IMG/VR virus record: IMGVR_UViG_3300017917_002434
Coordinates: 205,731 to 269,730 of that record
Length of the DNA stretch: 64,000 nt
Strand: one strand, 5' to 3'
Position 1 is the stretch's first letter. Each line of letters begins with the position of its first letter. Shown in pieces: positions 9,401 through 56,250 of the stretch. The position numbers and the translations under genes were made by a program. Under the pieces are notes generated by a model. That model was not told where the DNA came from and ran no database searches. It was given only the letters and a program-made list of their open reading frames with translations.

Positions 9401-11502
9401 CGGGAATCGTTTATATCGATAACGAAATGATTTCGTACACTGGAGTTAATACCAGCCAGAACAAACTCACAGGGTGTACTAGATCAGCACAGTTAGATCT
9501 ATTCATTGCTGGTGCTAATAGAAATTTTACCGCAGGGGTAGCTGCTAATCACAGCAACGGTACAGGTGTAATTTTAATGAATAACACTACAACACCTTTG
9601 ATTAGCCACTGGGGTAGTGCGTTCTTGACCGACGGATTGTTTGATTTTGACCGTGGATACATTTTCAACTATGCTTCTACCGGTCTAAGTGTAAGCACTG
9701 TTAAATCAACGGCTTTCCTAATTCGTCTAGCACCTAGTGTGTCAAACGCAGTTGTTGGAGATCTAGGCGATAGAGAGCTCCTAAATAGAGCACAATTACT
9801 ATTGAAAGAAATCGCAGTAACGTCAGACACAGGCTCGGGCGGTATTATTGTTGAGGGAGTATTAAATCCTCAGAATTATCCTTCTAATCCTAGCGACATT
9901 GTTTGGTCAGGTTTGTCCGGTGTTGCGGCCGGTGGTCAGCCTAGCTTCGCTCAGATAGCACCAGGAGGATCTGTAAACTGGTCAGGCGGCGTAGCCCAAC
10001 CAACAGCTACAGCCACAGCATTAAACACAGTTACCGCCAATATCACTGTACCAAATAAAACAGCATTCAATAGACCTGCTGGTACATCATTCGTCTATGT
10101 TACACAGACTAGCTGGAATACATCAGGATCCCAGAGTGGTTTCGCTATAGCAGCTTCAGATACTAAATTCCAGTCTGGTACAACAATTTCATCCGTAGCT
10201 TCGAGTCCTAGTCCAGTAGCCACGACATTAGGAATATTAACTTCTAGTATGTCTACATTCTTTAGAAGTATATCGGGTAATAGTATCAGCGGTAACGGTA
10301 TTACTGCCACATTGAACTTTAACAACCAAGGATACGTACCGTTTCCAGTAAATTCGAGAATAACTGTTAGTGGTTTCAGTGCTTATAATGGAACTTATAT
10401 CGTAACTGGAGCAGGAAATAACTTTGTACAGTTTGCCTCTACGTCGACTAACTTCCAAACAAACGGAACAGTCCAGACTGCTTACGTCGCTGGGCAGACA
10501 ACATTGAACATAACAGAAGCTAGTTGGAATAACATGACTAGCCCTGTAACACAGACAGGATTTGGCGTAACATCTTCATTTCCGGCAGGAACAACTGTCA
10601 CTGGAGTTACATCGATACAAGGAACATCGCCGAACAGATACTATACCGTGACATTCAGTCAGGGTCTTACTTCTGATTTACCGTTATCATCTACGACTAT
10701 CAATACCAGTTTTGGTGGAGCAAGAACAAGCACAAATAACCTATTCTTTACCGCAGCTAGTTGGACAGCATTACCAGTAGATGTTCCGGTTAACGGCACA
10801 CTGACTAATGATCCTACCAAATTTACTGGCGGAACTATTATCAACTCTATCAGCGGCCTACAGACATTTGGCGGTACTGGATACTATTCTGTATCATTTA
10901 GTAACAACTGTATAGGAACATTAGCAGGCGGAACAACTGTCACATTTGATACTATACCTTATTTTACTCTGTTCTTGAGTAGAACTTCGGCACAGGCTGT
11001 TAATGCTAATGCCACTATAACTATGTCATTGGCACAAAACTCTGCTGTCACCAACTTTGTGTATTTTACACAGGCCAGTTGGGAAACTCTAGTTTCGACC
11101 TATTCAGCAGGTGCCGGTACAGAAGTAGCAGATACAAAATTTGCTGCGGGTACTCGTGTTGCTACTGTGAGTACTCTAAGAACGTTTGGTGGTTCTGGAT
11201 ATTATGTAGTAACATTTACCCAGACGTCTAATGCTGTTGTGGCTGGCGGAAACACTATTACATTTAGATTTGGACAACCTCCATATGCGTTACCGGGCGA
11301 ACAGGTATTCTCATTCATCAGTTTACCAGGAAGTTCGGACAGTCTTAACCTAGAGGACCTCAAAGAATTAACCAATACTACCTTGGGTGGTAGAGGTACA
11401 TTCCCTAACGGTCCTGACGTTTTGGCTATCAACATCTTCAAAGTATCTGGAGCAGCAGTTAACGCTAACGTAATTCTACGTTGGTCCGAAGCACAAGCCT
11501 AA
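3421..11502 (+). CDS. Giant (2693 aa) modular virion structural / tail-fibre protein
   Basis: Single long ORF, Thr/Gly/Ser-rich, with three internal repeat families (KCxRDxG.., GxxYxxG..xNDxxIxV, xTxASW..KFxxGT). Confidence 0.75.
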   Translation: MAKRKIDNYTFRPGISYLGNLYPDEWQSFSDNVPFIKAELTAYLNYRIDIDTEVNLYPNAVRILENNINFIKEEATAWIATQVAGNFPGFVGYTYDSAKCKRDIGFVLTAYIHDVRYGGNEDTRTIVGKYWINNEPQVDGDRQAEVKTHEFIRDLITDYILPLASYTPLQLIATRYTTGPAAEANAAARIDTLSAITTTVIANGLSSMPAISYKSAPYENYTFNSEKCQRDLGYVLDAYLHDLRYGGNEQTRLTIQKYYDNGVLQVDGSGQAEVEGHEFVRDLIINNIMQNEAGTILYPEAVRLLTLNKAYLQNEILGWIANEVTEATKCERDIGYLIDGAQYDIVLGTNYNALFLGLAEFNSLDNDFFVIDTIQRTKTAIAALPNVAASTAAVARNNAFFNEVVDIIQNGRGSANELVLAEPSNATVSRIAAKNQLVANKNFLAAEVNAWVAEQYPTADHDPVKCSRDVKYAIDALCYDILYGGNSATYDQARFFFYGFSSGAPGIDPTHRLQTVAAYVHLKQVIGQVVQNQTVTKTTGNTLTQNQTFPAASSSDAIICQNLVQITADVVAATTQTQANTILSGIVRSVPSITFATSALQTAFNAITTAKTSVINSVVVFKGYTYDSAKCIRDSGFVIDALIYDLENNGNEESRRIAQKYYIDGVFQVDGSRIPEIASYRFLQETIKNYIFPRVNAPDYQIVYPQILTAPSAEVGAYARITELTDVFINFLKDGPSSLPALSQRTVPYQTVEQQVVDTTKAYDPDAGTAILALSNALVNIIEQGLGALPVKESAGYGLIKFQGVVRLEDLLLITNTTKNVVIYNFSSNTAGGEIVPEFDGDDDFIAFKQVTDRVIHLRLNVDTSTMDETDELQIFAEAPEMKVRPYDFGTDAIERHRVASPQSMLDADFEYGLQPTKWQAIGIARGYPSVYEVPGSDFEVVSITTDASFPNNGVGASTITVTTAAPHGLSAGTPVTVAGLDTAISGISRAEGAFVLVTIPTPTTFTYFAKSRVGTTSGTSLKTTYTQIRKGGFYTGASIGLPTINLLSNGTSGTFVTQFDTPAATSRIAIASGNIPSVGSPMNAAVGIGFGSQVTAVVGAGGVVVTPTVLGDYAPTLLGLTTLTVASTSGIVIGLGANDQTGSSTFVESIVGTNVTFTRPFSGAVIGNTTTYTELTGTNEISIGSAATFNVVGSSAGYISVAVNSGGSDYQVGDVLRIVGTDLTGTTPANDLLIKVATVSGGAILTADVISGTSVMSSPNETISGINNSSYTATSPDSTIGSGATFDVTRNGTAFTSVINAGGTGYVKGTEFLILGTVFTNNTTPANDVEITVTQTTATFTGLLQDATTLSGSSAQFSITRIGATYTSLVVSFAGSGYALGEIVTIYGTQLGGNNPSNDLQIQVDNVGGGGEIIAASLVSGLVANEDAPGVISQISTAGTGDNRTTINNVPVLIVPGSGINCEFSITRTASGYTNVVVTDGGTAYLPGNRIRILGSDLGGANTTNDAIVSVTSVDSITGAITAATVTGTGVAGINLQLYSSVTLSEFTTATIASSTSLGFGTLATLQIIFQEPHGIPPGGSFIVTVSSDNGSNNHALANGSFSATQIPTRNTITFQARSPGVITGAPITGVVYPRPDSFFTHRPFDGGVQLGTGGPQHGVQAIRQSKKYIRYQSGKGVMYTTGALFAPSYDVLSILATDVEVGATIEITLGDNDHGLQRGAVIRLSGVLTGGYDGDYEVDEIVSERTFRIIATKRVGSRKPSLSFSCQISTLRWKGAVVRAGVFDDQNGIFWEYDGQTLWAVQRTSTKQLAGTISVNAGSNRITGLNSRFRDQLKAGDAVTIRGMTHIVTHVDSQTSMTVNPDYRGVSNVSNAKMSLISEVRVQQRDFNKDRLDGTGPSGYDLDITKMQMIGIQYSWYGAGFIDFMLRGSDGNYVFAHRMRNSNINTEAYMRTGNLPVRYEVSNYGATSRLVGDIGNTSTELTLESIAGFPTTGIVYIDNEMISYTGVNTSQNKLTGCTRSAQLDLFIAGANRNFTAGVAANHSNGTGVILMNNTTTPLISHWGSAFLTDGLFDFDRGYIFNYASTGLSVSTVKSTAFLIRLAPSVSNAVVGDLGDRELLNRAQLLLKEIAVTSDTGSGGIIVEGVLNPQNYPSNPSDIVWSGLSGVAAGGQPSFAQIAPGGSVNWSGGVAQPTATATALNTVTANITVPNKTAFNRPAGTSFVYVTQTSWNTSGSQSGFAIAASDTKFQSGTTISSVASSPSPVATTLGILTSSMSTFFRSISGNSISGNGITATLNFNNQGYVPFPVNSRITVSGFSAYNGTYIVTGAGNNFVQFASTSTNFQTNGTVQTAYVAGQTTLNITEASWNNMTSPVTQTGFGVTSSFPAGTTVTGVTSIQGTSPNRYYTVTFSQGLTSDLPLSSTTINTSFGGARTSTNNLFFTAASWTALPVDVPVNGTLTNDPTKFTGGTIINSISGLQTFGGTGYYSVSFSNNCIGTLAGGTTVTFDTIPYFTLFLSRTSAQAVNANATITMSLAQNSAVTNFVYFTQASWETLVSTYSAGAGTEVADTKFAAGTRVATVSTLRTFGGSGYYVVTFTQTSNAVVAGGNTITFRFGQPPYALPGEQVFSFISLPGSSDSLNLEDLKELTNTTLGGRGTFPNGPDVLAINIFKVSGAAVNANVILRWSEAQA

Positions 11503-44496: not shown

Positions 44497-45696
44497 ATGT
44501 CATATAACACCTATATCGAAGACATTTTTATCGAAGTTGCCGAAAAAATATTAGAAGGCGATATCGCTACTCCGCATCTAGATTGGGGGCCTGTGAGTAG
44601 TTTTTATAGCACTATCACTACCGGTAAGTTATTGACTAGGAAACAGGCAGATTATCTTATACGACTGTTAAACAAATATCAAACTGCCTACCAAACGCTG
44701 ACTGGTAACGATATTTCTCCGTTCCTCATCTCGCCTGTATGGAAGAATCCCTTTAGGACATTAGATAATTCTAAAAGCATATCAGTAGTCAAAGAAGCTT
44801 CGGGGATACACTACCTTTATCTCAAGTTTCCTTATGTCCTCAAAGAGGTTTTTGTGGAAGAATTTACCCACAAAAATGAAAAGTTTCCTGCGATATGGGA
44901 CGACGAATTACGTGTTCAAAAAATCAAAGTCAACGACGTTAACTTGGTCAGATTACATGATTTTGTAAAAAATAATGGTTTTGATATTTCTGAAGATTTT
45001 TTAAATCTCGTGGCGGAAGTAGAAGAAATATGGGACCACGAAGATCAATTTTCGCCTGAGGCTGAAGTAGTGAATGGTTCAGTGGAAATTAAAAATTATA
45101 CCGAGTCGGCAAAAAATTATTTTGAGCAAAACAGATGTCACGACGTCATTAAAGATTTATTTCTAGCTCGCAGCATGGGTTATAAACTGACAAAATTTGA
45201 CCAAAAAAATCGTCTCGATAGACTGTTTTCGTGTCAAGAAACAAATTTCTGGATGAGAGGATTAGCTGAGTGTTTTTCTTTTATTAAGACCATAGACGTC
45301 TATCCTATAGTATTATTTTTGGACAGAGCCAGCAATTTAATAGAAGATGTGAACACTTATATTTCTGCGTTTAAAGACGCAGGTTTTGACGAAAAATCCA
45401 TAAGAATTTGTTTTCGATTTAGTAATGAAGAAGAAGGCGGAAAAAAGTTTAATCAATGGATAAAAAATAATGGCCTAGGCGGATCTGTAAGTACAGGCAA
45501 AATTTTTATCTGTCAACATAAACCTCCGAAATGGATGACCTCACCTGATTTTTCACCGAAAATCCTGATAAGTAATAGTCTCTATCCTGCGACTAGCAAA
45601 CAAACATCATCATTCATCAGACATCATCATACGGTCTTTTATGTTGGCAATGTCAAACCTTCAATGAACAAGGAAAATAAAATTGTCGAGCTGTAA
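44497..45696 (+). CDS. Hypothetical protein upstream of UvsW
   Basis: 399-aa ORF overlapping the uvsW start; no motif recognised. Confidence 0.7.
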   Translation: MSYNTYIEDIFIEVAEKILEGDIATPHLDWGPVSSFYSTITTGKLLTRKQADYLIRLLNKYQTAYQTLTGNDISPFLISPVWKNPFRTLDNSKSISVVKEASGIHYLYLKFPYVLKEVFVEEFTHKNEKFPAIWDDELRVQKIKVNDVNLVRLHDFVKNNGFDISEDFLNLVAEVEEIWDHEDQFSPEAEVVNGSVEIKNYTESAKNYFEQNRCHDVIKDLFLARSMGYKLTKFDQKNRLDRLFSCQETNFWMRGLAECFSFIKTIDVYPIVLFLDRASNLIEDVNTYISAFKDAGFDEKSIRICFRFSNEEEGGKKFNQWIKNNGLGGSVSTGKIFICQHKPPKWMTSPDFSPKILISNSLYPATSKQTSSFIRHHHTVFYVGNVKPSMNKENKIVEL

Positions 45697-47140
45697 ATTA
45701 ATTATTCGAGATGAAGTAAATGTAAAATTTGAGGGGCTTTCTCTCGAAACTCGACGCAAACTTGCCAATAAATTTAAGGTCGATGTTCCGTGGGCAAGAT
45801 ATCAACCATCCTATAGATTAGGAAGATGGGACGGTACCGTTGCCTTCTTCAGCATCGGCGGAACTGGCTACATGTGCCATCTAGAAGAGATACTAGAAAT
45901 TGTCACAAATGACGGTTATGACATAGAAGTAGAAGATCAACGACATCCAGTTCAGTTAGAGTTCAAAAAAGTATCAGAAACATATTGGGCCGATCAAGGC
46001 AAGACATGGCCCGAAGGTCACCCCGAGGCAGGCAAACCGATTTTACTAAGAGATTATCAATTTGATGCTATCAATAAATTCTTAGAAAATCCTCAATGTT
46101 TACAAGAAATTGCCACTGGTGCTGGCAAGACAATTACCACTGCTACACTCAGCCATTGTTGTGAAAAATACGGTAGAACAGTTATCGTAGTACCTAATAA
46201 ATCATTAGTAGAACAGACAGAAGAAGATTTTCGAAACGTGGGATTAGACGTTGGCGTCTATTACGGAGATCGAAAAGAATTAGGAAAAACCCATACTATC
46301 TGTACTTGGCAAAGTCTTAATGTGTTAGATAAAAAGAGCAAAGATGATCCCGATTCTATGACTTTAGGAGATTTTTTAAGTGGAGTTGTGGCATTCATCG
46401 TTGATGAGGTACATCAGGCCAAAGCCGAAGTGCTGAAAAACATTCTAACTAGAGACTTAGCATCATGTCCTATACGTTGGGGTCTCACAGGCACAATACC
46501 AAAAGAAAAATTTGAGTTCCAAAGTATTCTTGCCAGTATTGGTCCAGTTATTAACAAGATCTCTGCTCACGAATTACAACAGAAAAATGTTCTAGCACAA
46601 TGCCATGTAGAAGTTCTACAGACTATCGAAATCAAAGAATTTAGAAGTTATGCTGAGGAATTAAAATATCTAGTCACAGACTCTAGCAGAATAGATTGGC
46701 TAGCAGAACGCATCAAAAGTATCTCTAATTCAGGTAACACTTTGGTATTAATTGATCGAATAGAAACTGGTAAGATGTTACAGGAAAGAATGAAAGATAT
46801 TGATTTTATCAGCGGATCAGTAAAAACCAAAGACAGGAAAGAGAGCTATGACGAAATTAAAACTAGTGACAACAAGATTATTGTGGCGACTTATGGTGTG
46901 GCCGCTGTGGGTATTAATATCCCTCGCATTTTTAATCTGGTTCTTGTGGAGCCCGGAAAGAGCTTTGTCCGAGTTATACAATCAATTGGGCGAGGTATTA
47001 GAAAAGCAGAAGACAAAGACTTCGTCCAGATCTGGGACATAACAGGTGGAACAAAATATGCCAAGAGGCATTTGACAGAACGGAAGAAATTTTATAAGGA
47101 TGCTCACTATCCTTTCAATATTAATAAGGTAACAATATGA
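45683..47140 (+). CDS. uvsW: SF2 DNA helicase UvsW-like
   Basis: LRDYQ, ATGAGKT, VDEVH, GLTGT and QSIGRGIR motifs. Confidence 0.92.
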   Translation: MSSCKLIIRDEVNVKFEGLSLETRRKLANKFKVDVPWARYQPSYRLGRWDGTVAFFSIGGTGYMCHLEEILEIVTNDGYDIEVEDQRHPVQLEFKKVSETYWADQGKTWPEGHPEAGKPILLRDYQFDAINKFLENPQCLQEIATGAGKTITTATLSHCCEKYGRTVIVVPNKSLVEQTEEDFRNVGLDVGVYYGDRKELGKTHTICTWQSLNVLDKKSKDDPDSMTLGDFLSGVVAFIVDEVHQAKAEVLKNILTRDLASCPIRWGLTGTIPKEKFEFQSILASIGPVINKISAHELQQKNVLAQCHVEVLQTIEIKEFRSYAEELKYLVTDSSRIDWLAERIKSISNSGNTLVLIDRIETGKMLQERMKDIDFISGSVKTKDRKESYDEIKTSDNKIIVATYGVAAVGINIPRIFNLVLVEPGKSFVRVIQSIGRGIRKAEDKDFVQIWDITGGTKYAKRHLTERKKFYKDAHYPFNINKVTI

Positions 47141-47643
47141 GAATTTTAACATTAAAAAATCAAGCATTTGATTTGAACGAATTGCCAGAGGAAGTTGAAG
47201 AAGATACTAGATTTTCTGTATTAGATAATTCTAATACCAGCGATCCGGATTTCTTTTTCGTTCCTCTTATATTTTTAGAATCTTTTAATGCTCCAGCAAT
47301 AGTAATGAACATAGGCGGTCATGAGATACAGATGCCTTTGGATTGGAGTATGGTTGTCGGAGATAAAGAATGTGGCATGGATCCAGAAGTATTGCCGTTA
47401 ACCAGTATCAACGAAAGAGGATTTGAAGCATTCAGTCTTAATCCGATCAGCGGCTTTAGACCAGAATATCTTCCGATTGAAATCGTCAATATCTATCAGG
47501 ATGTTAAGTGGTATTTTCCTAAGATGAAAAATAATCAATTACTAACAGTGCCAGTGAGAGATGGAGAAGCACCTCCGTGTGTGTTCTTTGTTAAAGAGAT
47601 TTCGAGACAGAGCGAAGTCTTACAATTAGACAAATTATTTTAA
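47137..47643 (+). CDS. Conserved-looking hypothetical protein, possible inactive Hint-fold
   Basis: ATGA-coupled to uvsW; the beta-strand pattern resembles Hint domains but lacks catalytic residues. Confidence 0.45.
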   Translation: MRILTLKNQAFDLNELPEEVEEDTRFSVLDNSNTSDPDFFFVPLIFLESFNAPAIVMNIGGHEIQMPLDWSMVVGDKECGMDPEVLPLTSINERGFEAFSLNPISGFRPEYLPIEIVNIYQDVKWYFPKMKNNQLLTVPVRDGEAPPCVFFVKEISRQSEVLQLDKLF

Positions 47644-47888
47644 TGCCAATACCTTTTATGGATAGAGATTGGCAAGAAGAAAGCTTCTGGAGTCATTGTA
47701 TTGGAAAACAATTAAAAATCTCTCTGTGGCCTAGAAAATGTTATTACAGCAATAAATCGCTGTGGTTTAGAACATCTTATAAAGTAGTTGCTATGTGGAC
47801 CGGTCCTGGTGAACCAGTTTTTGAAAGTAGATGGATCGATGCCAATGAATATTTGATTAAAGCTATTAAAGGAGAAACTCGTGGGTAG
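47643..47888 (+). CDS. Hypothetical Trp-rich protein
   Basis: TAATG-coupled ORF of 81 aa. Confidence 0.6.
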   Translation: MPIPFMDRDWQEESFWSHCIGKQLKISLWPRKCYYSNKSLWFRTSYKVVAMWTGPGEPVFESRWIDANEYLIKAIKGETRG

Positions 47889-48177
47889 TCTTACACCGGG
47901 AGCGACTTATATCTATGAAAGAGATGGTAATACAGTTTATGCCAGAGAGATGGGTAAAACAGATCGCACTGTAATTGGTTATTCGTATGAAGGGGAAGCT
48001 AAGTTGAAAGACGTACAGAGAGAGGATACATTTCTAGGCCAACCTATGAGTGAAATTATGTTAATGGCTGCGATTCTAGAAGAATCTAAGACTAATTCGG
48101 CCTTGCGAGAAGAGGTAGAACGTGTTAAAATATTATATCATTTAGGCAAAAAAGATGGCGGACAAACTCGAACTTAA
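47881..48177 (+). CDS. Hypothetical protein
   Basis: GTG start with GGAG RBS; TYIYER.G.TVYARE motif. Confidence 0.65.
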   Translation: MGSLTPGATYIYERDGNTVYAREMGKTDRTVIGYSYEGEAKLKDVQREDTFLGQPMSEIMLMAAILEESKTNSALREEVERVKILYHLGKKDGGQTRT

Positions 48178-48628
48178 AACAGTACTAGCAGCGATAGATC
48201 TTGGTTCTAAAGAATCGTGGGATGAATTTTCAGATGAAGAAAAGAAATCTGTGGGATTCTTTTTACTCAATCGATATGTTAGCAATGTTAAAACTAACAA
48301 CCAAGATCTAGCAGAGCACTATTTGATTTTAGTAAATGAATTTGTAAACAAAAATTTCTATCTTATATCAAAACATCCTAAGTTGATGTGGCAATTGATG
48401 TGTGCGTGTAGTCACGATTCTAAAAAAATTCACTTCCACGAATGGATGGCATTGAAAAGGAAAAAAGACGATGGCGGCAAGAAAAGTCAGTTTCTACAAA
48501 CGATTTATCCTAATTCTAAAATTGATGACATACAGGTCTTGGCAGGTATGATGGATATCAAACAACTAAAACAGTTGGCCAGAGATCACGGGTATACGGA
48601 CAAGCAGATAAATGACCTTAAGCTATAA
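48155..48628 (+). CDS. Probable clamp-loader small subunit (T4 gp62-like)
   Basis: FFLLNRYVS..VNEFVNKN..HPKL.W pattern in a replication cluster. Confidence 0.5.
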   Translation: MADKLELKTVLAAIDLGSKESWDEFSDEEKKSVGFFLLNRYVSNVKTNNQDLAEHYLILVNEFVNKNFYLISKHPKLMWQLMCACSHDSKKIHFHEWMALKRKKDDGGKKSQFLQTIYPNSKIDDIQVLAGMMDIKQLKQLARDHGYTDKQINDLKL

Positions 48629-49295
48629 GTGCGGATATTGCGGTAAAGAGTTTACTAAAGAAAAAACTCTAACAGTACATGTCTGCGAGAAAAAAAGACG
48701 TCATCTAAGCAGGAATGAAAAACATGTTCAGGCTGCTCTTATCGCATATCAAAAATTTTATCAGATAGCACAGCGAGCCACAAAACAAAAAACTTTTGAA
48801 GAATTTGTTGACAGTCCCTATTATAACGCCTTTATAAAATTTGGTAGTTTTTTATCAAATGCTAATCCTATATATCCAGAGCAATATATCGAATGGGTGA
48901 TAAAAAGTGGAGTAAAATTAGATCATTGGTGTCGTGACGAATTGTATGATCAGTATCTTGTAGACTTAGTCAAAGGTGAGCCGGCAGACGGTGCCATACA
49001 ACGTACCATGAATACCATGCTGTCTTGGGCTGAGGAAAATAATGCCGAATGGGAACATTATTTTTTGTATGCGAACTTAAACAGAATAACGCAACATATT
49101 AGAGATGGGTTGATTAGTCCTTGGATTGTTTTAAACTGTAATAGTGGTCGAAAGATGTTAACGAAGTTAAATACCGAGCAGATCGAAATAATATCAACAG
49201 TACTAGATCCGGACCATTGGAATCGAAGATTTAAAAGCACACCCGGTGATCTTGAGCTAGTGAAAGAAATCATTAAAGAGGCTAAGATACCATAA
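48612..49295 (+). CDS. C2H2 zinc-finger-containing protein
   Basis: N-terminal CGYCGKEF..EKTL..HVC motif. Confidence 0.7.
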   Translation: MTLSYKCGYCGKEFTKEKTLTVHVCEKKRRHLSRNEKHVQAALIAYQKFYQIAQRATKQKTFEEFVDSPYYNAFIKFGSFLSNANPIYPEQYIEWVIKSGVKLDHWCRDELYDQYLVDLVKGEPADGAIQRTMNTMLSWAEENNAEWEHYFLYANLNRITQHIRDGLISPWIVLNCNSGRKMLTKLNTEQIEIISTVLDPDHWNRRFKSTPGDLELVKEIIKEAKIP

Positions 49296-49507
49296 TGAAA
49301 AAAGAAGAAATTACAGAAGATTTAGCCGAGAACGAAGAATACATTTCTCGAGACGATATTGACATTGAAGTTCGAGTGGACGAAGAAAATAACAGAGTTA
49401 TGGTATTATTTTCAGGTTTCAACGATGATGAAGATACACAAGAATACGCAGAATTTTTAGCATCAACATTACCTTTACTTCTATTTGAAAGCACGAGATT
49501 ACAGTAA
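49295..49507 (+). CDS. Small acidic hypothetical protein
   Basis: TAATG-coupled on both sides. Confidence 0.65.
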   Translation: MKKEEITEDLAENEEYISRDDIDIEVRVDEENNRVMVLFSGFNDDEDTQEYAEFLASTLPLLLFESTRLQ

Positions 49508-50085
49508 TGCCAGATATTGATATTGACTTTGAAGATCGTACGAAAGCACTAGCAGTACTCAAGCACATCAAAGCCAGTCGCTTAGATCGAGGAGAATTAG
49601 TTCCTCATAATACCGGTGTTTATCTTCACTCCGTTCCAATAGATGCGGGTAAGAATATATGCTCGATAGATCACGAAACCGCAGAAGAAAAAAATTATTT
49701 TAAGATAGATTTTTTGAATGTCAGTGTTTATAAAGATGTTAGAGATGAAGCACATCTTATTCAACTTATGGAGACAGAGCCACTATGGGATCTACTGGAA
49801 CAGGACGAATTCACGGATTTACTATTCCACGTAAATGGGTACGGGAACTTATTGAGACAGATGAAACCTCATTCTATAGAAGAATTGGCAATGTTGCTCG
49901 CTTTAATCCGCCCAGCGAAGAGACACCTCGTTGGGAAGAGCTGGACGGAGATTGGGACGACGATCTGGGAGAAACCGGAGAACGGTGAGTACTATTTTAA
50001 GAAAAGCCACGCTATAGCTTATGCTACAGCTATTGTGGTACAGATGAATCTAATCTGCGAAAAAGTCAGCTACGAGTTTAGTTGA
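49507..50085 (+). CDS. Miniature family-C (DnaE/Pol III alpha-like) polymerase core, 192 aa
   Basis: Ordered motifs PDIDIDF, HNTGVY, FKIDFLNV, LALIRP and FKKSHAIAY match the DnaE palm/finger motifs PDxDxDF, HAxGV, KxDFLGL, ALxRPG and FNKSHxxAY. Confidence 0.8.
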   Translation: MPDIDIDFEDRTKALAVLKHIKASRLDRGELVPHNTGVYLHSVPIDAGKNICSIDHETAEEKNYFKIDFLNVSVYKDVRDEAHLIQLMETEPLWDLLEQDEFTDLLFHVNGYGNLLRQMKPHSIEELAMLLALIRPAKRHLVGKSWTEIGTTIWEKPENGEYYFKKSHAIAYATAIVVQMNLICEKVSYEFS

Positions 50086-50460
50086 TTATTTTGAAGGCTT
50101 TCTAACCAGCGTTATAGATTTTCTTTTAACACGCTTGGTCATAATATCATTAAGACTAGTAACAGGTCCGAACATTACCTTTACATCTTTGGTACTGAAA
50201 TTTCTAATAATATATCTAAACTCTATCATTTCCTTTGATAAGAATATATTAATAGGAATCTGCCTATTTGATTCCCACCACCATATTTCGCCTAGTTCTA
50301 AAAACCTAGTTTTCTCTTTTTCGGAACGTAAAGAACTGTAATCGTAGATGCTGGTGATAGCGGCGTCTTGATTTATTATTATTCCTACATATTCTTGGTC
50401 CACATACGTTATTACGCTTATGAACGGAAAGTTTTCTTGTAAATGTTGACTAATTCTCAT
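50086..50460 (-). CDS. Hypothetical protein
   Basis: 124-aa ORF abutting the mini-DnaE tail-to-tail; WWWESNR motif. Confidence 0.7.
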   Translation of the reverse strand: MRISQHLQENFPFISVITYVDQEYVGIIINQDAAITSIYDYSSLRSEKEKTRFLELGEIWWWESNRQIPINIFLSKEMIEFRYIIRNFSTKDVKVMFGPVTSLNDIMTKRVKRKSITLVRKPSK

Positions 50461-50491
50461 CGATAAATACTAAATTATAGGGCCACTGAAT

Positions 50492-50953
50492 ATGCAGCTC
50501 AATCCGTGTTATTTATATTCGAATCGAATGGACATATATACTAATCTTGGCTCTTGGACAAAGGAGAGGTTTAGAAAAGTGTATCAACGAACAATGAAAA
50601 TCTATAAGGGCGTGGATAATCGTCTAGACTTCCAAGTCCGCAATAACGACAATAAGCCTAAGGATATCACCGATCTAACCAGTGTTACTTTTAATATAGT
50701 AGCAGTAGATACAAAAGGTATCCAATTACAAAAAGCAGTTACTATCGAAACGCCAGCACAGGGTAAAATGTTTGTACTCCTAACTGAAGAAGAAATCCAG
50801 GATTTAGAACGTGGGTACTATCATTTCAGCATGTTTTATATTGATAGTGATGGTAATAGGTTCCCATTATACGGAGACAGCCAGTATGATGCTTTGGGAC
50901 AATTACACGTAATCGATGGTGCTTTTGATATTGACAGCACGACTGTAATCTAG
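50492..50953 (+). CDS. Ig-like/BppU-like structural protein
   Basis: Late box TAAATA at 50464; beta-sandwich-like pattern (LDFQVRN..KDIT..GKMFVLLT..GYYHFS). Confidence 0.45.
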   Translation: MQLNPCYLYSNRMDIYTNLGSWTKERFRKVYQRTMKIYKGVDNRLDFQVRNNDNKPKDITDLTSVTFNIVAVDTKGIQLQKAVTIETPAQGKMFVLLTEEEIQDLERGYYHFSMFYIDSDGNRFPLYGDSQYDALGQLHVIDGAFDIDSTTVI

Positions 50954-50959
50954 TATAAT
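50931..50959 (+). promoter_or_regulatory. Consensus sigma70 promoter (leaderless) for primase
   Basis: TTGACA-17 bp-TATAAT; ATG 6 nt downstream at 50966. Confidence 0.85.
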
Positions 50960-50965
50960 TAGTCT

Positions 50966-51973
50966 ATGGCTCTGGTCGTAGACATCTTTCAAAAACATCT
51001 TCCTTATAAAAAGAAGCAAACTCCCAGCGGATGGATCAGTTTTGATGCTCCGTGTTGTCATCATCGGGGTGAAGGCACTGATACTAGACAGCGGGGTGGA
51101 GTGAAATTTTCTGACGGTTTAGTATTCAATTGTTTTAATTGTGGATATACTGCCAGTTGGAAACCGGGTAGACAGATCAGTCAAAAATTACGACAGTTAA
51201 TGATTTGGTTGGGTGCTCCTGACGATGATATCAACATGATGGTGTTTGAAGCACTGAAAACAGAAAGCGGTGCTGAAGATACTACCAAAGATCGAGAATT
51301 AATTGATTTCGTTAATAAAGATCTTCCAGACGGTGCTTTACCCATATCAGAGTGGATTGATCAAGAAATAGGTCACGATCTCGAAATACAGTTAGCTGAG
51401 GTGGTAAGTTATCTAGTAGATCGAGGTTGCGATCCATTAGATGATAGATTTTATTGGACTCCTATTGATATCAAAGATAGAGTTATCATACCCTTTACCT
51501 ATGGTGGCAGAATCGTCGGTTGGACTGCTAGAAAAGTTAAAGAAGGCAAACCAAAATATCTGTCAGACCAACATCCTAACTTTGTTTTTAATCTAGATTC
51601 AATCAAACAAGATCAACGATATCTTTTCGTAGTCGAAGGTCCTTTTGATGCTATGGCTGTCAACGGCGTAGCACTACTACACAACGAAATATCAGAAAAT
51701 CAAGCAAGGCTGATAAACAAGATGGGCAAAGAAGTTATAGTAATTCCAGATCAAGACAAAGCAGGTAGTAAACTTATAGAACATGCCTTGAAGTGGGATT
51801 GGGCTGTGGCATTTCCTACATGGCATGATGATGTTAAAGATTGTTCAGATGCTGTAAGGAGGTATGGTAGTTTGTTTGTAGCTGTAGATGCCATCTCAAC
51901 TGCTCAGCAAGGTGCGATTCGGATAAATTTATATAAGAACAAATTTGATAAAAAGGTACAGGAAAATGTTTAG
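50966..51973 (+). CDS. gp61: DNA primase (T4 gp61-like; Zn finger + TOPRIM)
   Basis: CC..CFNC Zn finger; TOPRIM VEGPFDA and PDQD motifs. Confidence 0.88.
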   Translation: MALVVDIFQKHLPYKKKQTPSGWISFDAPCCHHRGEGTDTRQRGGVKFSDGLVFNCFNCGYTASWKPGRQISQKLRQLMIWLGAPDDDINMMVFEALKTESGAEDTTKDRELIDFVNKDLPDGALPISEWIDQEIGHDLEIQLAEVVSYLVDRGCDPLDDRFYWTPIDIKDRVIIPFTYGGRIVGWTARKVKEGKPKYLSDQHPNFVFNLDSIKQDQRYLFVVEGPFDAMAVNGVALLHNEISENQARLINKMGKEVIVIPDQDKAGSKLIEHALKWDWAVAFPTWHDDVKDCSDAVRRYGSLFVAVDAISTAQQGAIRINLYKNKFDKKVQENV

Positions 51974-52058
51974 ATTATATAGAAAATTTAGAGATTGGTT
52001 GCTCTATCGAAAACGTATCAAAGAGCTTCGTAAAAGAGATCCATTTATCTACAAATGA
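51966..52058 (+). CDS. 30-aa basic micropeptide (MFRLYRKFRDWLLYRKRIKELRKRDPFIYK)
   Basis: Hand-translated and missed by the ORF track; overlaps the primase stop and is ATGA-coupled to the next gene. Confidence 0.7.
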   Translation: MFRLYRKFRDWLLYRKRIKELRKRDPFIYK

Positions 52059-52981
52059 TTACCTGGGGAATCAATGCCTTAAATCACGATATCAGCATCG
52101 CGGTCTTTGAAGGCAAACATTTAAAAAAATTTGAAACGGTTAAAGGTAAAGATACCGACCACGATATTATCAAAAGGTCTCTAAATGCCTCTAGCGGTCA
52201 TGGGCCTAGTGTTATCGCATGGTATGAACGACCATGGATAAAGAAGACACGTCAGTTATATGCCGGTCAATATAACGCAGCCTTTGACATGAGCGTAGTA
52301 CCTCGATTATGGCTGAAACGCAATAACTTAGGATATGCCAAAGTAAAATACTTTCCACACCACAAGAGTCACGCCGCAGCTGGTTTTCTAACTAGTCCGT
52401 TTGATAAAGCCACTGTGGTTGTATTAGATGCTATGGGAGAGTGGGAATCTGCTACAATCTGGTATGGGCACGGAACTGAGCTAAAAAAGATATGGAGTAG
52501 AAGTTACCCAAACAGTCTAGGTATATTTTATTCTGCCTTTACTCAACTAATAGGTTATAAACCTGTATCCGAAGAATACTTGTTACAGCAAGACAGCGAA
52601 AAAGGTGATCCAAAAAAATACTACGAGTTAGTTAAAAATTATTTTAATGGCGTTGTTAGTCTTCGATATAATTTACACTGTGGCGTATTAGATTGGCCTT
52701 GGCCTATAGTGACTAATCAAGATAAATGGGATATAGCTGCCGCTGTCCAATGTGTATTCGAAGAACAAGCAGACATGGTGATGTTGATCGCTAGGAGATT
52801 ATCAGAAAGTAGAAATCTCGTTTATATGGGCGGCTGTGCTATGAACAGCAAATACAATAGATATCTCAGCACACAATGGGATAATGTTTGGTCATTACCT
52901 AATACTGGTGATCCTAGCAGTGCTATAGGTGCTGCTCTTTTACATCTCGATACCAGGATAACATTACCCAAAGATCTATGA
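52055..52981 (+). CDS. Carbamoyltransferase N-terminal (Kae1-like) domain only
   Basis: NHD.S, HHKSHAAAGF, VLDAMGE, SLGIFYS, GGCAMN and GDPSSAIGAA motifs; stops before the C-terminal domain. Confidence 0.85.
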   Translation: MITWGINALNHDISIAVFEGKHLKKFETVKGKDTDHDIIKRSLNASSGHGPSVIAWYERPWIKKTRQLYAGQYNAAFDMSVVPRLWLKRNNLGYAKVKYFPHHKSHAAAGFLTSPFDKATVVVLDAMGEWESATIWYGHGTELKKIWSRSYPNSLGIFYSAFTQLIGYKPVSEEYLLQQDSEKGDPKKYYELVKNYFNGVVSLRYNLHCGVLDWPWPIVTNQDKWDIAAAVQCVFEEQADMVMLIARRLSESRNLVYMGGCAMNSKYNRYLSTQWDNVWSLPNTGDPSSAIGAALLHLDTRITLPKDL

Positions 52982-54144
52982 CAAAATGTGTAAATGCTTA
53001 TATGAATCTCAGCGTTCATCCAAATGGTGTAGTAAAGCCATGTTGTATGAGCAGAAAGATTTTCGTAACAGATGATAAAAAACAATCACTGGAATCAGCT
53101 AAGATCAAAGATTTTTGGCAGAGCAAGGATCGACAATCTTTTATACAGAGATTAGAGCAAGGCGAACAGTTATCAGAATGTTCTAGTTGCTGGGCCGAAG
53201 AACGAGCAGGAAAAAAATCTAAACGGTTGCGTGACAACGAGCTGTGGGGCGAAAATAATTTCGATGCCAGCAGCCAACCAGTGGTGCTAGATATCAGCAT
53301 GGACAATCTATGTAATCTACGCTGTCGCATCTGTGGGCCTGAAAATTCCAGTCAATGGCAAGCTGAAGAATCTAAAAGACTAGGCGATAAAATGCCTAAG
53401 ATGTTTAAAGTAAAAGACCAATGGCAAGAATTAATAGATTTCAGCAAATCAGTACAGCACATTGATTTCAGCGGTGGAGAACCATTCTATATCGACAACC
53501 ATTGGAAATTATTAAAGCATTTGGTAGAAAATGGTCGTAGCCGCAGTATAAGTCTACACTACAACACCAATGGAACAATATTTCCTAAAGAAAACATAGA
53601 GTTATTAAATCAGTTTAAATCTGTAGATATACAGATCAGTACAGACGGTATTGATAAAAAATTTGAATATCTACGACATCCTGCTGTATGGGATGAACAT
53701 GTGTCTAATATAGAAGAATTTAAAAAGCAAAACTGGAAGATAGGTGTGTGTTTTAGTCTCAGCGTGTTCAATGTCAACGATGTATTTGAAACCTATGAAT
53801 TCTATAGATCCAAAGGACTTAGTTTTTATCTCAACATAGTACACGGCGATCACAGTGTACAGATAATGCCTAGAGACCTAAGAAATCAGATTATTAGAAA
53901 ATTAGAATCCTGCCATAGCAGAGTAGATCAGAAAGATTGGGATGAAAATAAATCGGTGATCGTAGGCTATCTAAACAGTCCCTTTGACCTTAGTTGGAAA
54001 TGGCAGACATTTTGGCAGGCTACTTATAATCGCGATCAATTGCGGCAGCAGAATTATACTGAAGTGTTTCCTGAGACTTGGAAGATGGTAGAGCCTTGGC
54101 TTGCTAGTACTAGAATAAGAGTGTATAATATTAATAATGTATAA
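52978..54144 (+). CDS. Radical SAM protein with N-terminal SPASM/twitch-like domain
   Basis: CNLRCRIC (CxxxCxxC), GGEPF and NTNGT motifs; N-terminal C..PCC..CSSC. Confidence 0.9.
   Translation: MTKCVNAYMNLSVHPNGVVKPCCMSRKIFVTDDKKQSLESAKIKDFWQSKDRQSFIQRLEQGEQLSECSSCWAEERAGKKSKRLRDNELWGENNFDASSQPVVLDISMDNLCNLRCRICGPENSSQWQAEESKRLGDKMPKMFKVKDQWQELIDFSKSVQHIDFSGGEPFYIDNHWKLLKHLVENGRSRSISLHYNTNGTIFPKENIELLNQFKSVDIQISTDGIDKKFEYLRHPAVWDEHVSNIEEFKKQNWKIGVCFSLSVFNVNDVFETYEFYRSKGLSFYLNIVHGDHSVQIMPRDLRNQIIRKLESCHSRVDQKDWDENKSVIVGYLNSPFDLSWKWQTFWQATYNRDQLRQQNYTEVFPETWKMVEPWLASTRIRVYNINNV
54101..54129 (+). promoter_or_regulatory. sigma70-type promoter (leaderless)
   Basis: TTGCTA-17 bp-TATAAT; ATG 7 nt downstream at 54137. 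Confidence 0.7.
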
Positions 54145-54829
54145 GTGGAATGATATTGTTGTTGTAGGTGACAGTTTCTGTGCGGCACGAAGTGTGCCTA
54201 ATCACTGGCCCTATAGATTAGCCAATCTAATCACTGGCGAAGATCCCGGCCCTAAGCGACCTGTGAGAGGACACGGATGGGGTGGTGCCAGTTGGTGGGC
54301 AGTCAAAAAACAGTTGCCTTTTTATCTCAAAGCAGGACCTAAGATTCTAGTAGTGTGCCATACAGAGCCTATGAGATTACCCAACGATAGAAACAAACCC
54401 ATAGGATTAGCCACAGCCGAAGCAGATAATCCTGACACCGTAGAGAACACCGATTTCGCTCTGTACGAAGCTGCTAGACAATATTATAGAAATCTGTTCT
54501 GCGAAGACTTTCATCTATGGTCACAGGAGCAATGGTTTAAAGAACTAGACGATCTAGTTGATAGTACTGCTAGCCTTGAACAGGTTTATCACCTACACTG
54601 TTTCCGCGGTAAATGGAACCGGTATCCGTTCAGACGCGGTGTGAGATTTTTAGATAATCTGTTTCACTACGCTGAACCTAGTGACAAAGATTATCAGGGC
54701 AATGAAAATCATAATCATTTTGATTCTGCCAATAATCATAGGTTGGCTCAACAACTAGCAGAGCTGATTAAAAATTATCCCGGGGACGGGCATGTGGTAA
54801 GTAAATTTACTCTCAAAGAAAAACGATGA
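54137..54829 (+). CDS. SGNH/GDSL-like hydrolase or acyltransferase
   Basis: VVGDSF nucleophile motif and a C-terminal NHF. Confidence 0.6.
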   Translation: MYKWNDIVVVGDSFCAARSVPNHWPYRLANLITGEDPGPKRPVRGHGWGGASWWAVKKQLPFYLKAGPKILVVCHTEPMRLPNDRNKPIGLATAEADNPDTVENTDFALYEAARQYYRNLFCEDFHLWSQEQWFKELDDLVDSTASLEQVYHLHCFRGKWNRYPFRRGVRFLDNLFHYAEPSDKDYQGNENHNHFDSANNHRLAQQLAELIKNYPGDGHVVSKFTLKEKR

Positions 54830-56250
54830 CTAAGAATTACGATTACGACGTACAGAAATTATATCTAGAAATGATGTTGGCAGATGCTGAAACATTCGTT
54901 CGCTGCCAAGGTATTTTCGACAGTACTCTGTTTGATAGAAAACTACAAGAAGCCGCAGAATTCGTACACAAATACGCAGAGCAGTATACAGTATTGCCAG
55001 AGTTTGAGATGGTCAATGCCAGTTGTGGCACAGATCTAAAAGACCCCGGAGAGCTCAAAGATGGACACTTAGATTGGCTCATGGATGAATTTGAACAGTT
55101 TACTCGTCATAAGAGTCTAGAACGTGCTATCATTGAATCGGCTGATCTATTAGAAAAACATGACTATGGTCAGGTAGAAGCTAAGATCAAAGAAGCTGTA
55201 CAGATTGGTCTGGCTCGAGACATGGGCACAGATTATTTCGCTGATCCTAGAGCACGTCTGATGGGACTCAAAGACAAGAATGGGCAGGTCAGTACAGGTT
55301 GGTCCAGCATGGATCGTAAACTGTTTGGCGGCATGAATCGTGGAGAACTGAATATCTTCGCAGGCGGATCTGGTGCTGGTAAAAGTCTGTTCTTAGCCAA
55401 CCTTGGAGTGAACTGGGCGTTGAATGGTATGAACGTGATATACCTAACACTGGAACTTTCAGAAGCATTGGTCAGTATGCGTATCGATTCTATGCTCACA
55501 GGTGTGCCCACTAAAGAGATCTTTAGAAACATCGATGACATCGAGATGAAGGTCAAACTCGTGGGCAAGAAAGCAGGACTATTCCAAGTCAAATACATGC
55601 CATCAGGTAAGACTGTCAACGACATACGTGCTTATATCAAAGAATATGAGATCAAAGTTGGACGTCGTGTAGATGTGTTGTTAGTGGATTATATGGATCT
55701 ATTGATGCCTATCTCTAAGAAGATTTCGCCAGCGGACCTGTTTATCAAAGACAAATTCGTATCAGAAGAACTGCGTAATCTAGCCATGGAGAAACAGTGT
55801 GTGTTCGTTACAGCGGCACAGTTGAATCGTGGGGCTGTTGAAGAAGTAGAATTTGATCACAGCCACATTTCAGGTGGTTTGTCAAAGATCCAGACAGCAG
55901 ACAACGTGTTTGGTATCTTTACCAGCCGTGCTATGCGTGAGCGTGGTCGCTATCAATTACAGCTGATGAAGACTCGTAGTTCAAGCGGTGTAGGACAAAA
56001 GATAGATCTAGAGTACAATATCGAGACACTGAGAATCACTGATCTACCAGAGGATCAGCAGGAACAGGAAAGCCAGATGCGTAGCAGCCAGATCATCAAT
56101 CAGATCAAATCACGCACCAGCACAGTGGTAGACGAAGATGGCGTCATAGATCCCAATCGCGGCAGCAGTCTAACACCCGCACCCAAGGCCATAGTAGAAA
56201 GCACCAAACTCAAACAGTTTATCAATAACCTAACACAAGATGAAGAGTAA
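54826..56250 (+). CDS. gp41: Replicative DnaB-like helicase (T4 gp41-like)
   Basis: Walker A GGSGAGKS, TLELSE, VDYMDL, AAQLNR and QLMKTR motifs. Confidence 0.93.
   Translation: MTKNYDYDVQKLYLEMMLADAETFVRCQGIFDSTLFDRKLQEAAEFVHKYAEQYTVLPEFEMVNASCGTDLKDPGELKDGHLDWLMDEFEQFTRHKSLERAIIESADLLEKHDYGQVEAKIKEAVQIGLARDMGTDYFADPRARLMGLKDKNGQVSTGWSSMDRKLFGGMNRGELNIFAGGSGAGKSLFLANLGVNWALNGMNVIYLTLELSEALVSMRIDSMLTGVPTKEIFRNIDDIEMKVKLVGKKAGLFQVKYMPSGKTVNDIRAYIKEYEIKVGRRVDVLLVDYMDLLMPISKKISPADLFIKDKFVSEELRNLAMEKQCVFVTAAQLNRGAVEEVEFDHSHISGGLSKIQTADNVFGIFTSRAMRERGRYQLQLMKTRSSSGVGQKIDLEYNIETLRITDLPEDQQEQESQMRSSQIINQIKSRTSTVVDEDGVIDPNRGSSLTPAPKAIVESTKLKQFINNLTQDEE

What the first reader, a model, noticed from the sequence alone, without database searches (positions are those of the whole stretch)
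49507..50085. Miniature 192-aa DnaE-like (family C) polymerase core in a T4-type replisome cluster
Seen: five DnaE signature motifs in the correct order within only 192 aa: PDIDIDF (two catalytic Asp), HNTGVY, FKIDFL (third Asp), LALIRP and FKKSHAIAY. The ORF begins at the catalytic motif, is TAATG-coupled, and is bounded by intact unrelated genes, so it does not look like a broken fragment. Established: DnaE is >1000 aa, with PHP, thumb, extended fingers, HhH, OB and clamp-binding regions, and its palm has a Pol-beta nucleotidyltransferase fold. T4-like phages normally replicate with a family B gp43. Inference: a stripped-down catalytic module with a new role. Candidates are primer extension hand-off with the adjacent primase, lesion or gap filling, template-independent or protein-primed nucleotidyl transfer, or one half of a split polymerase whose processivity domains are neighbouring ORFs (for example the Zn-finger protein at 48612).
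Basis: partly seen in the sequence, partly recalled or inferred. Interest (0 to 1): 0.8.

Follow-up and report, generated by a model that had tools for sequence, protein, structure and literature searches.

The report
Half of a split mini DnaE polymerase
This 192-residue gene is real, intact and strongly conserved, but it is the metal-binding half of a two-piece miniature DnaE-type polymerase of giant phages that was already described by computer analysis in 2021 and has never been tested at the bench.

Summary
ORF 49507-50085 (+) encodes 192 aa carrying all five DnaE motifs in order. It is TAATG-coupled and sits between intact genes in a UvsW / primase / DnaB-helicase block.

It is not a broken fragment:
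- More than 7,900 homologues of about 192 aa exist.
- D3, D5, K66, D68 and P136 are invariant in 89 divergent representatives.
- Median dN/dS is 0.09.
- The AlphaFold model (pLDDT 96.9) matches only Pol III alpha structures.

It is not a self-contained polymerase either. It lacks the NTP-binding GRGS part of the palm. In related jumbo phages a separate protein of about 175 aa supplies that part, encoded 30-220 kb away. That protein ends where E. coli alpha reaches about residue 393, and this ORF starts at about residue 400. Rare natural 375-aa fusions join the two pieces colinearly, and their model again matches only C-family polymerases.

Iyer et al. 2021 (Viruses 13:63) described exactly this: a "minimal", split Pol III alpha in group 2.2 jumbo phages, alongside a family B polymerase. 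The finding is therefore already known. I could not locate the partner in this phage's own genome, and the enzyme's role is untested.

The parts
49507..50085 (+). C-terminal (Mg2+-binding palm strands plus reduced fingers) subunit of the split minimal Pol III alpha, 192 aa
49513..49527 (+). DIDID: D3 and D5 (E. coli D401 and D403, catalytic) and D7 (E. coli D405, the DnaE-type fourth Asp)
   Evidence: D3 and D5 invariant and D7 at least 90% in 89 representatives; 80/80 in IMG/VR relatives; residue equivalence from PMC3919608
49606..49617 (+). HNTG: H34 and G37, palm strand following the deleted thumb
   Evidence: at least 90% conserved; 80/80
49702..49710 (+). KID: K66 and third catalytic Asp D68 (E. 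coli K553 and D555)
   Evidence: invariant; aligned to the E. coli VKFDFL motif in 2HNH
49909..49914 (+). R135-P136 of LALIRP (E. coli ALFRPG, ends at residue 641)
   Evidence: P136 invariant, R135 at least 90%; alignment
49999..50010 (+). KKSH: K165 and H168 (E. coli FNKSH, about residues 757-761)
   Evidence: at least 90% conserved; second aligned stretch 152-179 to 740-768
49295..49507 (+). 70-aa very acidic ORF, translationally coupled on both sides. A clade-specific neighbour; no evidence it belongs to the enzyme
   Evidence: found in 66/80 related loci; absent in PA5oct and replaced by a 121-aa ORF in RaK2
48612..49295 (+). 227-aa C2H2 Zn-finger protein (phrog_11058), a conserved upstream neighbour across the clade; function unknown
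   Evidence: Similar-sized ORFs (236-251 aa) sit in the same position in Phosso, Atu_ph07, PA5oct and RaK2; their homology to this protein was not tested directly
50086..50460 (-). 124-aa opposite-strand ORF (phrog_11637), an invariably conserved downstream neighbour; function unknown
   Evidence: 80/80 loci. An ORF of similar size, position and orientation is present in all four isolates examined
45683..47140 (+). UvsW-type SF2 helicase, start of the conserved replisome block
   Evidence: synteny
50966..51973 (+). gp61-type Toprim primase
   Evidence: synteny
54826..56250 (+). gp41 / DnaB-type replicative helicase
   Evidence: synteny

Best explanation
The ORF encodes the C-terminal subunit of a two-subunit, phage-specific minimal C-family (DnaE-type) nucleotidyltransferase. 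This subunit carries the palm beta-strands with all three metal-binding aspartates (D3, D5, D68) and K66. It also carries a cut-down fingers module that keeps the conserved R135-P136 and K165/H168 motifs. It lacks the part of the Pol-beta-type palm that holds the incoming nucleotide's triphosphate (the GxGRGS loop and its helices). A separate protein of about 175 aa (phrog_11127) provides that part and is encoded elsewhere in the genome. The two proteins are inferred to associate non-covalently, without an intein, to rebuild one active site. The resulting enzyme of about 370 aa has no PHP domain, thumb, (HhH)2, clamp-binding motif or OB domain. It is therefore most likely a distributive accessory DNA polymerase working beside the phage's family B replicase. 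Its fixed position in the UvsW / primase / helicase block suggests short synthesis at primers or gaps. Shown here: homology, the exact split point, conservation, purifying selection, co-occurrence of the halves in isolates, natural fusions, and fold. Inferred: heterodimer formation, catalytic activity, templated DNA synthesis, and the role in the replisome.
For: The ORF matches phrog_11778 over its full length at E 8.5e-68. The catalytic residues are invariant in 89 representatives at or below 58% identity and in 80/80 IMG/VR relatives, with median dN/dS 0.086 over 144 pairs. The family profile hits E. coli alpha 2HNH at E 5.7e-6, aligning residues 54-140 to 538-641 and 152-179 to 740-768. The AF2 model has pLDDT 96.9, and its nine best Foldseek PDB hits are all Pol III alpha. 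The partner, Atu_ph07 gp316 (177 aa), matches phrog_11127 at E 1.7e-70 and DnaE profile phrog_405 at positions 361-435. Its GxGRGS..S motif is invariant, and its last 45 residues align to E. coli 348-392, ending 8 residues before D401. The two halves occur in the same isolate genomes, with matching genus counts and at least 25 shared accessions, at separations of 30-224 kb. Natural fusions P0194, P0271 and P0272 (375-376 aa) carry phrog_11127 at residues 8-180 and phrog_11778 at 190-374, and phrog_405 matches contiguously across the junction at E 6e-15. The fused model has pLDDT 89.3 and pTM 0.86, and its 15 best PDB hits are all DnaE or PolC, from E 1.5e-8 to 5.8e-5. The published description is in PMC7824862. 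The same block of UvsW, a 236-251-aa ORF in the Zn-finger position, the C-half, a reverse ORF, a structural protein, primase and helicase recurs in Phosso, Atu_ph07, PA5oct and RaK2.
Against: I could not find the N-terminal partner in this phage's own genome. It is not in the window, and the source contig never appeared among the capped IMG/VR hit lists. No biochemical or genetic data on either half turned up in the literature. Association of the halves is inferred from colinearity, fusions and co-occurrence; no complex was modelled or measured. The enzyme lacks a thumb and every known processivity element, so templated polymerase activity is not guaranteed. The N-half profile matches solved DnaE structures only weakly on its own (E 0.27).
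Confidence: 0.8

Rival explanations
1. Stand-alone miniature polymerase or nucleotidyltransferase: the 192-aa protein is catalytically sufficient on its own.
For: It holds all three catalytic Asp residues, K66 and the fingers motifs, and folds as a confident compact unit with pTM 0.89.
Against: The NTP-binding GRGS subdomain of the palm is missing. A dedicated protein that supplies exactly that piece co-occurs in the isolate genomes. Fusions show the two are parts of one enzyme.
Confidence: 0.08
2. The C-half (with or without the N-half) needs conserved neighbours as further subunits. Candidates are the C2H2 Zn-finger protein at 48612, the 157-aa protein at 48155, the 70-aa acidic protein, or the primase. 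These would stand in for the missing thumb or processivity parts.
For: The gene order is tightly conserved. The Zn-finger protein is found in 78/80 related loci and the 157-aa protein in 76/80. ORFs of similar size sit in the same positions in distant isolates. The genes are translationally coupled.
Against: None of the neighbours resembles a DnaE domain. Conserved order in a replisome block does not show physical association. The 70-aa ORF is missing in PA5oct.
Confidence: 0.15
3. Catalytically dead relic: a DnaE fragment kept as a structural or regulatory replisome part.
For: The domain loss is extreme, and no activity has ever been shown.
Against: A scaffold would not be expected to keep every metal ligand, the neighbouring Lys and the fingers residues invariant at dN/dS of about 0.09. 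The partner likewise keeps its GRGS motif invariant.
Confidence: 0.05
4. Intein-split DnaE joined by protein trans-splicing, as in cyanobacterial DnaE.
For: It is a DnaE homologue split into two distantly encoded genes.
Against: There is no room for intein halves. The N-halves align end to end with residues 1-180 of the natural fusion, and the C-halves with residues 182-375, starting at the DxD motif. No intein domain was detected.
Confidence: 0.01

Closest known systems
Split minimal DNA polymerase III alpha of group 2.2 jumbo phages (Iyer, Anantharaman, Krishnan, Burroughs & Aravind 2021, Viruses 13:63; PHROGs 11778 and 11127)
   Same: Same family with a full-length profile match, the same start at the DxD motif, and the same genomic setting: a T4-like replisome in a jumbo myovirus on a contig of at least 270 kb, syntenic with Atu_ph07, Phosso, PA5oct and RaK2.
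   Different: Nothing essential differs. This copy comes from an uncultivated freshwater or pond phage. The best isolate match is 56% identical (Sinorhizobium phage Phosso). Its N-terminal partner was not located.
Bacterial Pol III alpha / DnaE1 (E. coli 2HNH, T. aquaticus 2HPI/3E0D/4IQJ, M. tuberculosis 5LEW)
   Same: It has a Pol-beta-type palm with the D401/D403/D555 triad, the DnaE-type D405, K553, and the fingers motifs ALFRPG and FNKSH, all colinear.
   Different: The protein is 192 aa against about 1,160 aa. The polypeptide is broken between about residues 393 and 399. There is no PHP domain. The thumb is deleted: 47 residues span what takes 133 in E. coli between D405 and residue 538. 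The fingers segment 642-739 is reduced to about 12 residues. There is no (HhH)2, clamp-binding motif, OB or C-terminal domain.
Reduced phage and bacterial DnaE-like proteins of 496-920 aa without PHP (ESM Atlas clusters)
   Same: The model of the closest Atlas cluster (feature score 0.99 to this ORF, not the ORF's own model) aligns to them at TM 0.75-0.79 over 188-191 residues. They suggest a graded series of reductions.
   Different: They are single polypeptides that keep DNA_pol3_alpha, the fingers and mostly HHH_6. They were not examined further.
Cyanobacterial intein-split DnaE
   Same: It is a DnaE encoded as two distant genes.
   Different: That enzyme is full-size and is re-joined by a split intein. 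Here there is no intein, and the break lies inside the palm.
Bacillus subtilis DnaE (DnaE3), the primer-extending polymerase that works with primase and helicase (PMC3664799)
   Same: This is only a functional analogy: a second C-family enzyme that extends primers beside the main replicase. The gene here is embedded between helicases and primase.
   Different: The B. subtilis enzyme is full-length. No evidence was obtained here for a primer hand-off role.

Membership tests
C-family DNA polymerase catalytic core (Pol III alpha / DnaE) | Three catalytic aspartates (E. coli D401, D403, D555) | tested here: met
   D3, D5 and D68 are invariant in 89 representatives and in 80/80 relatives. D68 aligns to D555.
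C-family DNA polymerase catalytic core (Pol III alpha / DnaE) | DnaE-type fourth Asp (E. coli D405; Asn in PolC) | tested here: met
   D7 is at least 90% conserved and present in 80/80 relatives. The criterion comes from PMC3919608.
C-family DNA polymerase catalytic core (Pol III alpha / DnaE) | Fold of the DnaE palm and fingers | tested here: met
   For the C-half model, Foldseek PDB ranks 1-9 are all Pol III alpha, with probability 0.72-1.00 and TMq 0.38-0.57. For the fused form, ranks 1-15 are all DnaE or PolC.
C-family DNA polymerase catalytic core (Pol III alpha / DnaE) | NTP-binding GRGS subdomain of the palm in the same polypeptide | tested here: not met
   The ORF starts at the residue equivalent to E. 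coli P400. The GRGS segment lies in a separate protein family.
C-family DNA polymerase catalytic core (Pol III alpha / DnaE) | PHP domain and (HhH)2, nearly universal in cellular C-family enzymes (PMC3919608) | tested here: not met
   Pfam finds only a weak DNA_pol3_finger hit. The protein ends about 24 residues after the KSH motif.
C-family DNA polymerase catalytic core (Pol III alpha / DnaE) | Thumb domain, clamp-binding motif and OB domain | tested here: not met
   47 residues replace E. coli 405-538, and nothing lies beyond the equivalent of about residue 790.
Split minimal Pol III alpha of group 2.2 jumbo phages (C-terminal unit, phrog_11778) | Full-length match to the family; about 190 aa starting at the DxD motif | tested here: met
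   E 8.5e-68, with residues 3-186 matching profile positions 8-194 of 197. 88 of 90 representatives have DxD within the first 25 residues.
Split minimal Pol III alpha of group 2.2 jumbo phages (C-terminal unit, phrog_11778) | Separate N-terminal NTP-binding unit (phrog_11127) in the same genome | tested here: inconclusive
   It is present in the isolate relatives. It is absent from the 64-kb window and was not recovered for the source contig. About 205 kb of the contig could not be read.
Split minimal Pol III alpha of group 2.2 jumbo phages (C-terminal unit, phrog_11778) | Jumbo myovirus with a T4-like replisome (UvsW, gp61, gp41) | tested here: met
   The contig is 269,730 bp. The window holds tail sheath, terminase, UvsX, UvsW, primase and DnaB-like genes. 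Synteny is shown.
Split minimal Pol III alpha of group 2.2 jumbo phages (C-terminal unit, phrog_11778) | Co-resident family B DNA polymerase | not testable with these tools
   tblastn with Atu_ph07 gp276 and gp277 finds nothing in the window. The rest of the genome was not available.
Intein-split DnaE | Split-intein halves at the break | tested here: not met
   The halves align end to end with the natural fusion, with no extra sequence. There is no intein domain.

The most novel reading that the evidence does not exclude
The pair may not be a conventional templated DNA polymerase. It could be a replisome-tethered specialist, for example an enzyme that extends primase products for a few nucleotides before hand-off to the family B replicase. 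It could also be a template-independent or modified-nucleotide transferase. In either case the conserved Zn-finger and small neighbouring proteins might act as its DNA-binding subunits. Under this reading the enzyme would be the smallest working C-family catalytic core, and a model for the ancestral state of the bacterial replicase, as Iyer et al. speculated.
Probability: 0.2. Interest if true: 0.7.

Novelty: already known. Interest (0 to 1): 0.35.

Why it matters
C-family polymerases replicate all bacterial chromosomes and were thought to be large, multi-domain and essentially confined to bacteria. A conserved two-piece core of about 370 aa, abundant in environmental jumbo phages, marks the minimum that selection keeps of this enzyme. 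It offers a tractable system for asking what the palm-plus-fingers core can do without a PHP domain, thumb or clamp binding. It also raises the question of why phages that already have a family B replicase keep it. That case was made in 2021.
- the exact break point;
- rare natural fusions that act as a Rosetta stone for the two halves;
- confident structure models;
- strong purifying selection;
- evidence that the family numbers in the thousands in freshwater, soil and other metagenomes.

No bench data on the enzyme turned up in the literature searched.

Tried and rejected
- Megablast of 48000-52000 against phage genomes found no match. The phage has no close cultured relative.
- Single-sequence phmmer against PDB gave only marginal DnaE hits (E 0.45-1.7). 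A family profile was needed.
- I searched the window for the N-half, the family B polymerase, a Pol I-like protein and the clamp loader of Atu_ph07 and found none.
- I tried to find the partner in the same genome. Three IMG/VR scans with N-half queries never returned the source contig.
- Five N-half-bearing contigs from the same metagenome were found. Exact-protein look-ups for four of them did not reproduce the multi-sample co-occurrence seen for the C-half, so no link could be made.
- I tested whether N- and C-half genes are ever adjacent. No C-half lies within 2 kb of any of 80 N-half loci.
- MAFFT stacked the two half-families on top of each other in combined alignments (A3 and A4). A composition that aligned correctly was found empirically (A5, then A6).
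Those rows were dropped and not sent again.
- The PA5oct omics paper has no statement about either half.
- The intein, relic and stand-alone readings were considered and rejected, as set out under rival explanations.

Full report
**1. The observation**

The ORF at 49507-50085 (+) is exactly as described. It is 192 aa with an ATG start and a TGA stop. It carries PDIDIDF (residues 2-8), HNTGVY (34-39), FKIDFL (65-70), LALIRP (131-136) and FKKSHAIAY (164-172). Its ATG overlaps the TAA stop of a 70-aa ORF (TAATG). That ORF is coupled in the same way to a 227-aa C2H2 Zn-finger ORF. The next gene downstream is on the opposite strand.

The surrounding genes are a UvsW-type helicase (45683-47140), a Toprim primase (50966-51973) and a DnaB-like helicase (54826-56250). 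Further upstream lie a UvsX-like recombinase, a terminase and tail-sheath genes. The window is the last ~64 kb of a 269,730-bp metagenomic contig from a pond sample. One freshwater metagenome from a different study contains the whole 4.9-kb stretch around the gene in a single contig, with 32 differences. At least 19 further runs from 10 studies hold large parts of it. The locus is therefore not an assembly artefact.

**2. It is a real, selected gene, not a fragment**

- The protein matches PHROG 11778 ('DNA polymerase', a 197-position profile) end to end at E 8.5e-68. It also matches the full-length DnaE PHROG 405 more weakly, at E 7e-12.
- A word-indexed search returned 7,983 homologues, a capped figure. 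The best 120 are almost all 191-193 aa.
- An exhaustive search of 50%-identity cluster representatives found 407 clusters. 90 of the best 150 are 183-220 aa long, and 88 of those 90 start within about 20 residues of a DxD motif.
- In an alignment of 89 such representatives (28-58% identical to the query), D3, D5, K66, D68 and P136 are invariant. D7, H34, G37, R135, K165 and H168 are at least 90% conserved.
- In 80 IMG/VR relatives all eleven of these positions are unchanged. Pairwise dN/dS over 144 gene pairs has a median of 0.086 and a range of 0.047-0.172.
- Two freshwater metatranscriptome libraries contain 142-171-nt contigs, at least 98.6% identical, that lie inside the ORF. DNA carry-over cannot be excluded.

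**3. Relation to DnaE**

A profile of the family hits E. coli Pol III alpha (2HNH) at E 5.7e-6. Residues 54-140 align to 538-641, which includes VKFDFL with K553/D555 and ALFRPG. Residues 152-179 align to 740-768, which includes FNKSH. The DIDID motif corresponds to E. coli D401/D403/D405, and the fourth Asp is a DnaE rather than PolC signature (PMC3919608).

The protein therefore spans the equivalent of E. coli residues ~400-790 in 192 residues. Two pieces are cut out:

- 47 residues stand where E. coli has 133 between D405 and residue 538. From my recollection of the Lamers 2006 domain boundaries, this is the thumb region.
- About 12 residues replace E. coli 642-739 in the fingers.

The AlphaFold2 model built on the 89-sequence alignment is very confident (pLDDT 96.9, pTM 0.89). 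Its nine best Foldseek matches in the PDB are all Pol III alpha chains from T. aquaticus, M. tuberculosis and E. coli, with probability 0.72-1.00 and TMq 0.38-0.57. Everything below rank 9 is noise.

**4. What is missing, and where it is**

The ORF begins at the equivalent of E. coli P400. It therefore lacks the first half of the Pol-beta-type palm, including the GxGRGS loop that holds the triphosphate of the incoming nucleotide.

The literature search showed that this arrangement is published. Iyer et al. [quoted passage not shown] I verified this independently:

- Atu_ph07 gp316 (177 aa) matches PHROG 11127 at E 1.7e-70 and DnaE PHROG 405 at positions 361-435.
- N-half alignments keep GxGRGS..S invariant.
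- The last 45 residues of the N-half profile align to E. coli 348-392, ending in ERFL, 8 residues before D401. On its own this is a weak match (E 0.27), but only Pol III alpha chains are hit.
- tblastn finds the C-half in 96 phage records and the N-half in 136. The genus counts for the jumbo clade match: Escherichia 34/34, Pseudomonas 11/11, Klebsiella 11/10, Erwinia 8/8, Salmonella 8/8, Xanthomonas 4/4. At least 25 accessions are visible in both lists. I take the extra N-half hits (Streptomyces, Enterococcus, Bacteroides and Clostridium phages) to be phages with full-length DnaE, which I did not check.
- The two genes are 30-224 kb apart in Vibrio phage 2.275.O, RaK2, PA5oct, Atu_ph07 and Phosso. 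They were never within 2 kb of each other in 80 metagenomic loci.

**5. Natural fusions**

One representative (P0194, 375 aa) and two relatives (P0271 and P0272, 376 aa, 78-81% identical) come from separate assemblies from two archives. Each carries the N-half at residues 8-180 and the C-half at 190-374 in one ORF, joined by a short linker. The full-length DnaE profile runs contiguously across the junction, with residues 101-207 matching profile positions 357-462 at E 6e-15.

In a correctly laid-out combined alignment, N-halves cover residues 1-180 of the fusion. C-halves cover 182-375, beginning at the DxD motif. This leaves no room for intein sequences.

The AlphaFold2 model of the fusion is confident as a single body (pLDDT 89.3, pTM 0.86), and only the linker is weak. 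Its 15 best PDB matches are all C-family polymerases, both DnaE and PolC, from E 1.5e-8 to 5.8e-5. The next hit is at E 6.8.

I did not see these fusions mentioned in the parts of the 2021 paper that I read.

**6. Genomic setting**

The same gene order recurs in Phosso, Atu_ph07, PA5oct and RaK2:

1. UvsW helicase
2. several small ORFs
3. a 236-251-aa ORF in the position of the window's Zn-finger gene
4. in some phages, a small ORF
5. the C-half
6. an opposite-strand ORF of ~120 aa
7. a virion or structural protein
8. primase
9. DnaB-type helicase

Among 80 metagenomic relatives, the Zn-finger protein is found in 78, the opposite-strand ORF in 80, the 157-aa protein in 76 and the 70-aa acidic ORF in 66. 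None of these neighbours shows any similarity to a polymerase domain. The N-half has its own conserved setting near MazG, GroES and the clamp loader.

**7. Mechanism**

This section is inference. The C-half supplies the metal ligands, K66 and the reduced fingers. The N-half supplies the triphosphate-binding loop. Together they should rebuild a Pol-beta-type active site.

The enzyme has no thumb, PHP domain, (HhH)2, clamp-binding motif or OB domain, so it should be distributive. Its fixed place in the helicase-primase block, together with the presence of a family B replicase in the clade, points to a short-patch role such as primer extension, gap filling or repair. Iyer et al. made the same suggestion. 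No biochemical or genetic test was found.

**8. Limits**

I could not find the partner gene of this particular phage. It is not in the window. About 205 kb of the source contig could not be read. Capped collection scans never returned that contig. N-half-bearing contigs from the same metagenome could not be tied to it.

**9. Verdict**

The suggested partners and the implied novelty are not.

Noticed in passing
P0194, P0271, P0272 (locus L011:1066-2193 for P0194): Natural single-ORF fusions (375-376 aa) of the N- and C-halves of the minimal Pol III alpha, on short, very AT-rich contigs (L011 has 25% GC). I did not see them mentioned in the parts of the 2021 paper I read. They could be used as a ready-made single-chain version for biochemistry.
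   Followed up: yes
window 52055-54829: Three genes sit between the primase and the DnaB-like helicase: a Carbam_trans_N protein, a radical SAM/SPASM protein and a 230-aa protein of unknown function. In Phosso, PA5oct and RaK2 the primase and helicase are adjacent. This may be an inserted modification cassette.
   Followed up: partly
window 67-1167: A second carbamoyltransferase-like ORF (NodU/Nol-type, matching phrog_1601 positions 198-524) lies 51 kb from the Carbam_trans_N ORF at 52055. I did not examine whether the two are parts of one enzyme.
   Followed up: no
window 49295-49507: A 70-aa, very acidic ORF is TAATG-coupled to both its neighbours. It is conserved in 66 of 80 related metagenomic loci and absent from PA5oct. 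Its function is unknown.
   Followed up: partly
L002:9001-9567 (Atu_ph07 gp074, NC_042013.1): The annotated start of the RefSeq CDS (L002:9073) lies downstream of the tblastn match start (L002:9001). The annotated protein therefore lacks the catalytic DxD motif, so the start is probably mis-called. The N-half of Vibrio phage 2.275.O (L015) shows a similar short annotation.
   Followed up: partly
window 49787-49985: Two freshwater metatranscriptome libraries hold contigs of 142-171 nt, at least 98.6% identical, inside the C-half ORF. The rest of 47100-52000 shows only short, poorer matches. This hints at transcription, but DNA carry-over is not excluded.
   Followed up: partly
window 3421-11502: A giant 2,693-aa ORF matches virion structural protein families (phrog_5838 at E 1e-235) and has a tail-fibre-like N-terminal part.
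   Followed up: no
ESM Atlas clusters: Phage and bacterial DnaE-like proteins of 496-920 aa without a PHP domain align to the model of the closest Atlas cluster (not the ORF's own model) at TM 0.75-0.79. This suggests a graded series of DnaE reductions, of which the split form is the extreme.
   Followed up: no
L003:6878-9847 (Atu_ph07 gp276/gp277): In this clade the family B polymerase is itself annotated as two adjacent genes (417 and 565 aa). Both polymerases of these phages therefore appear to be split.
   Followed up: no
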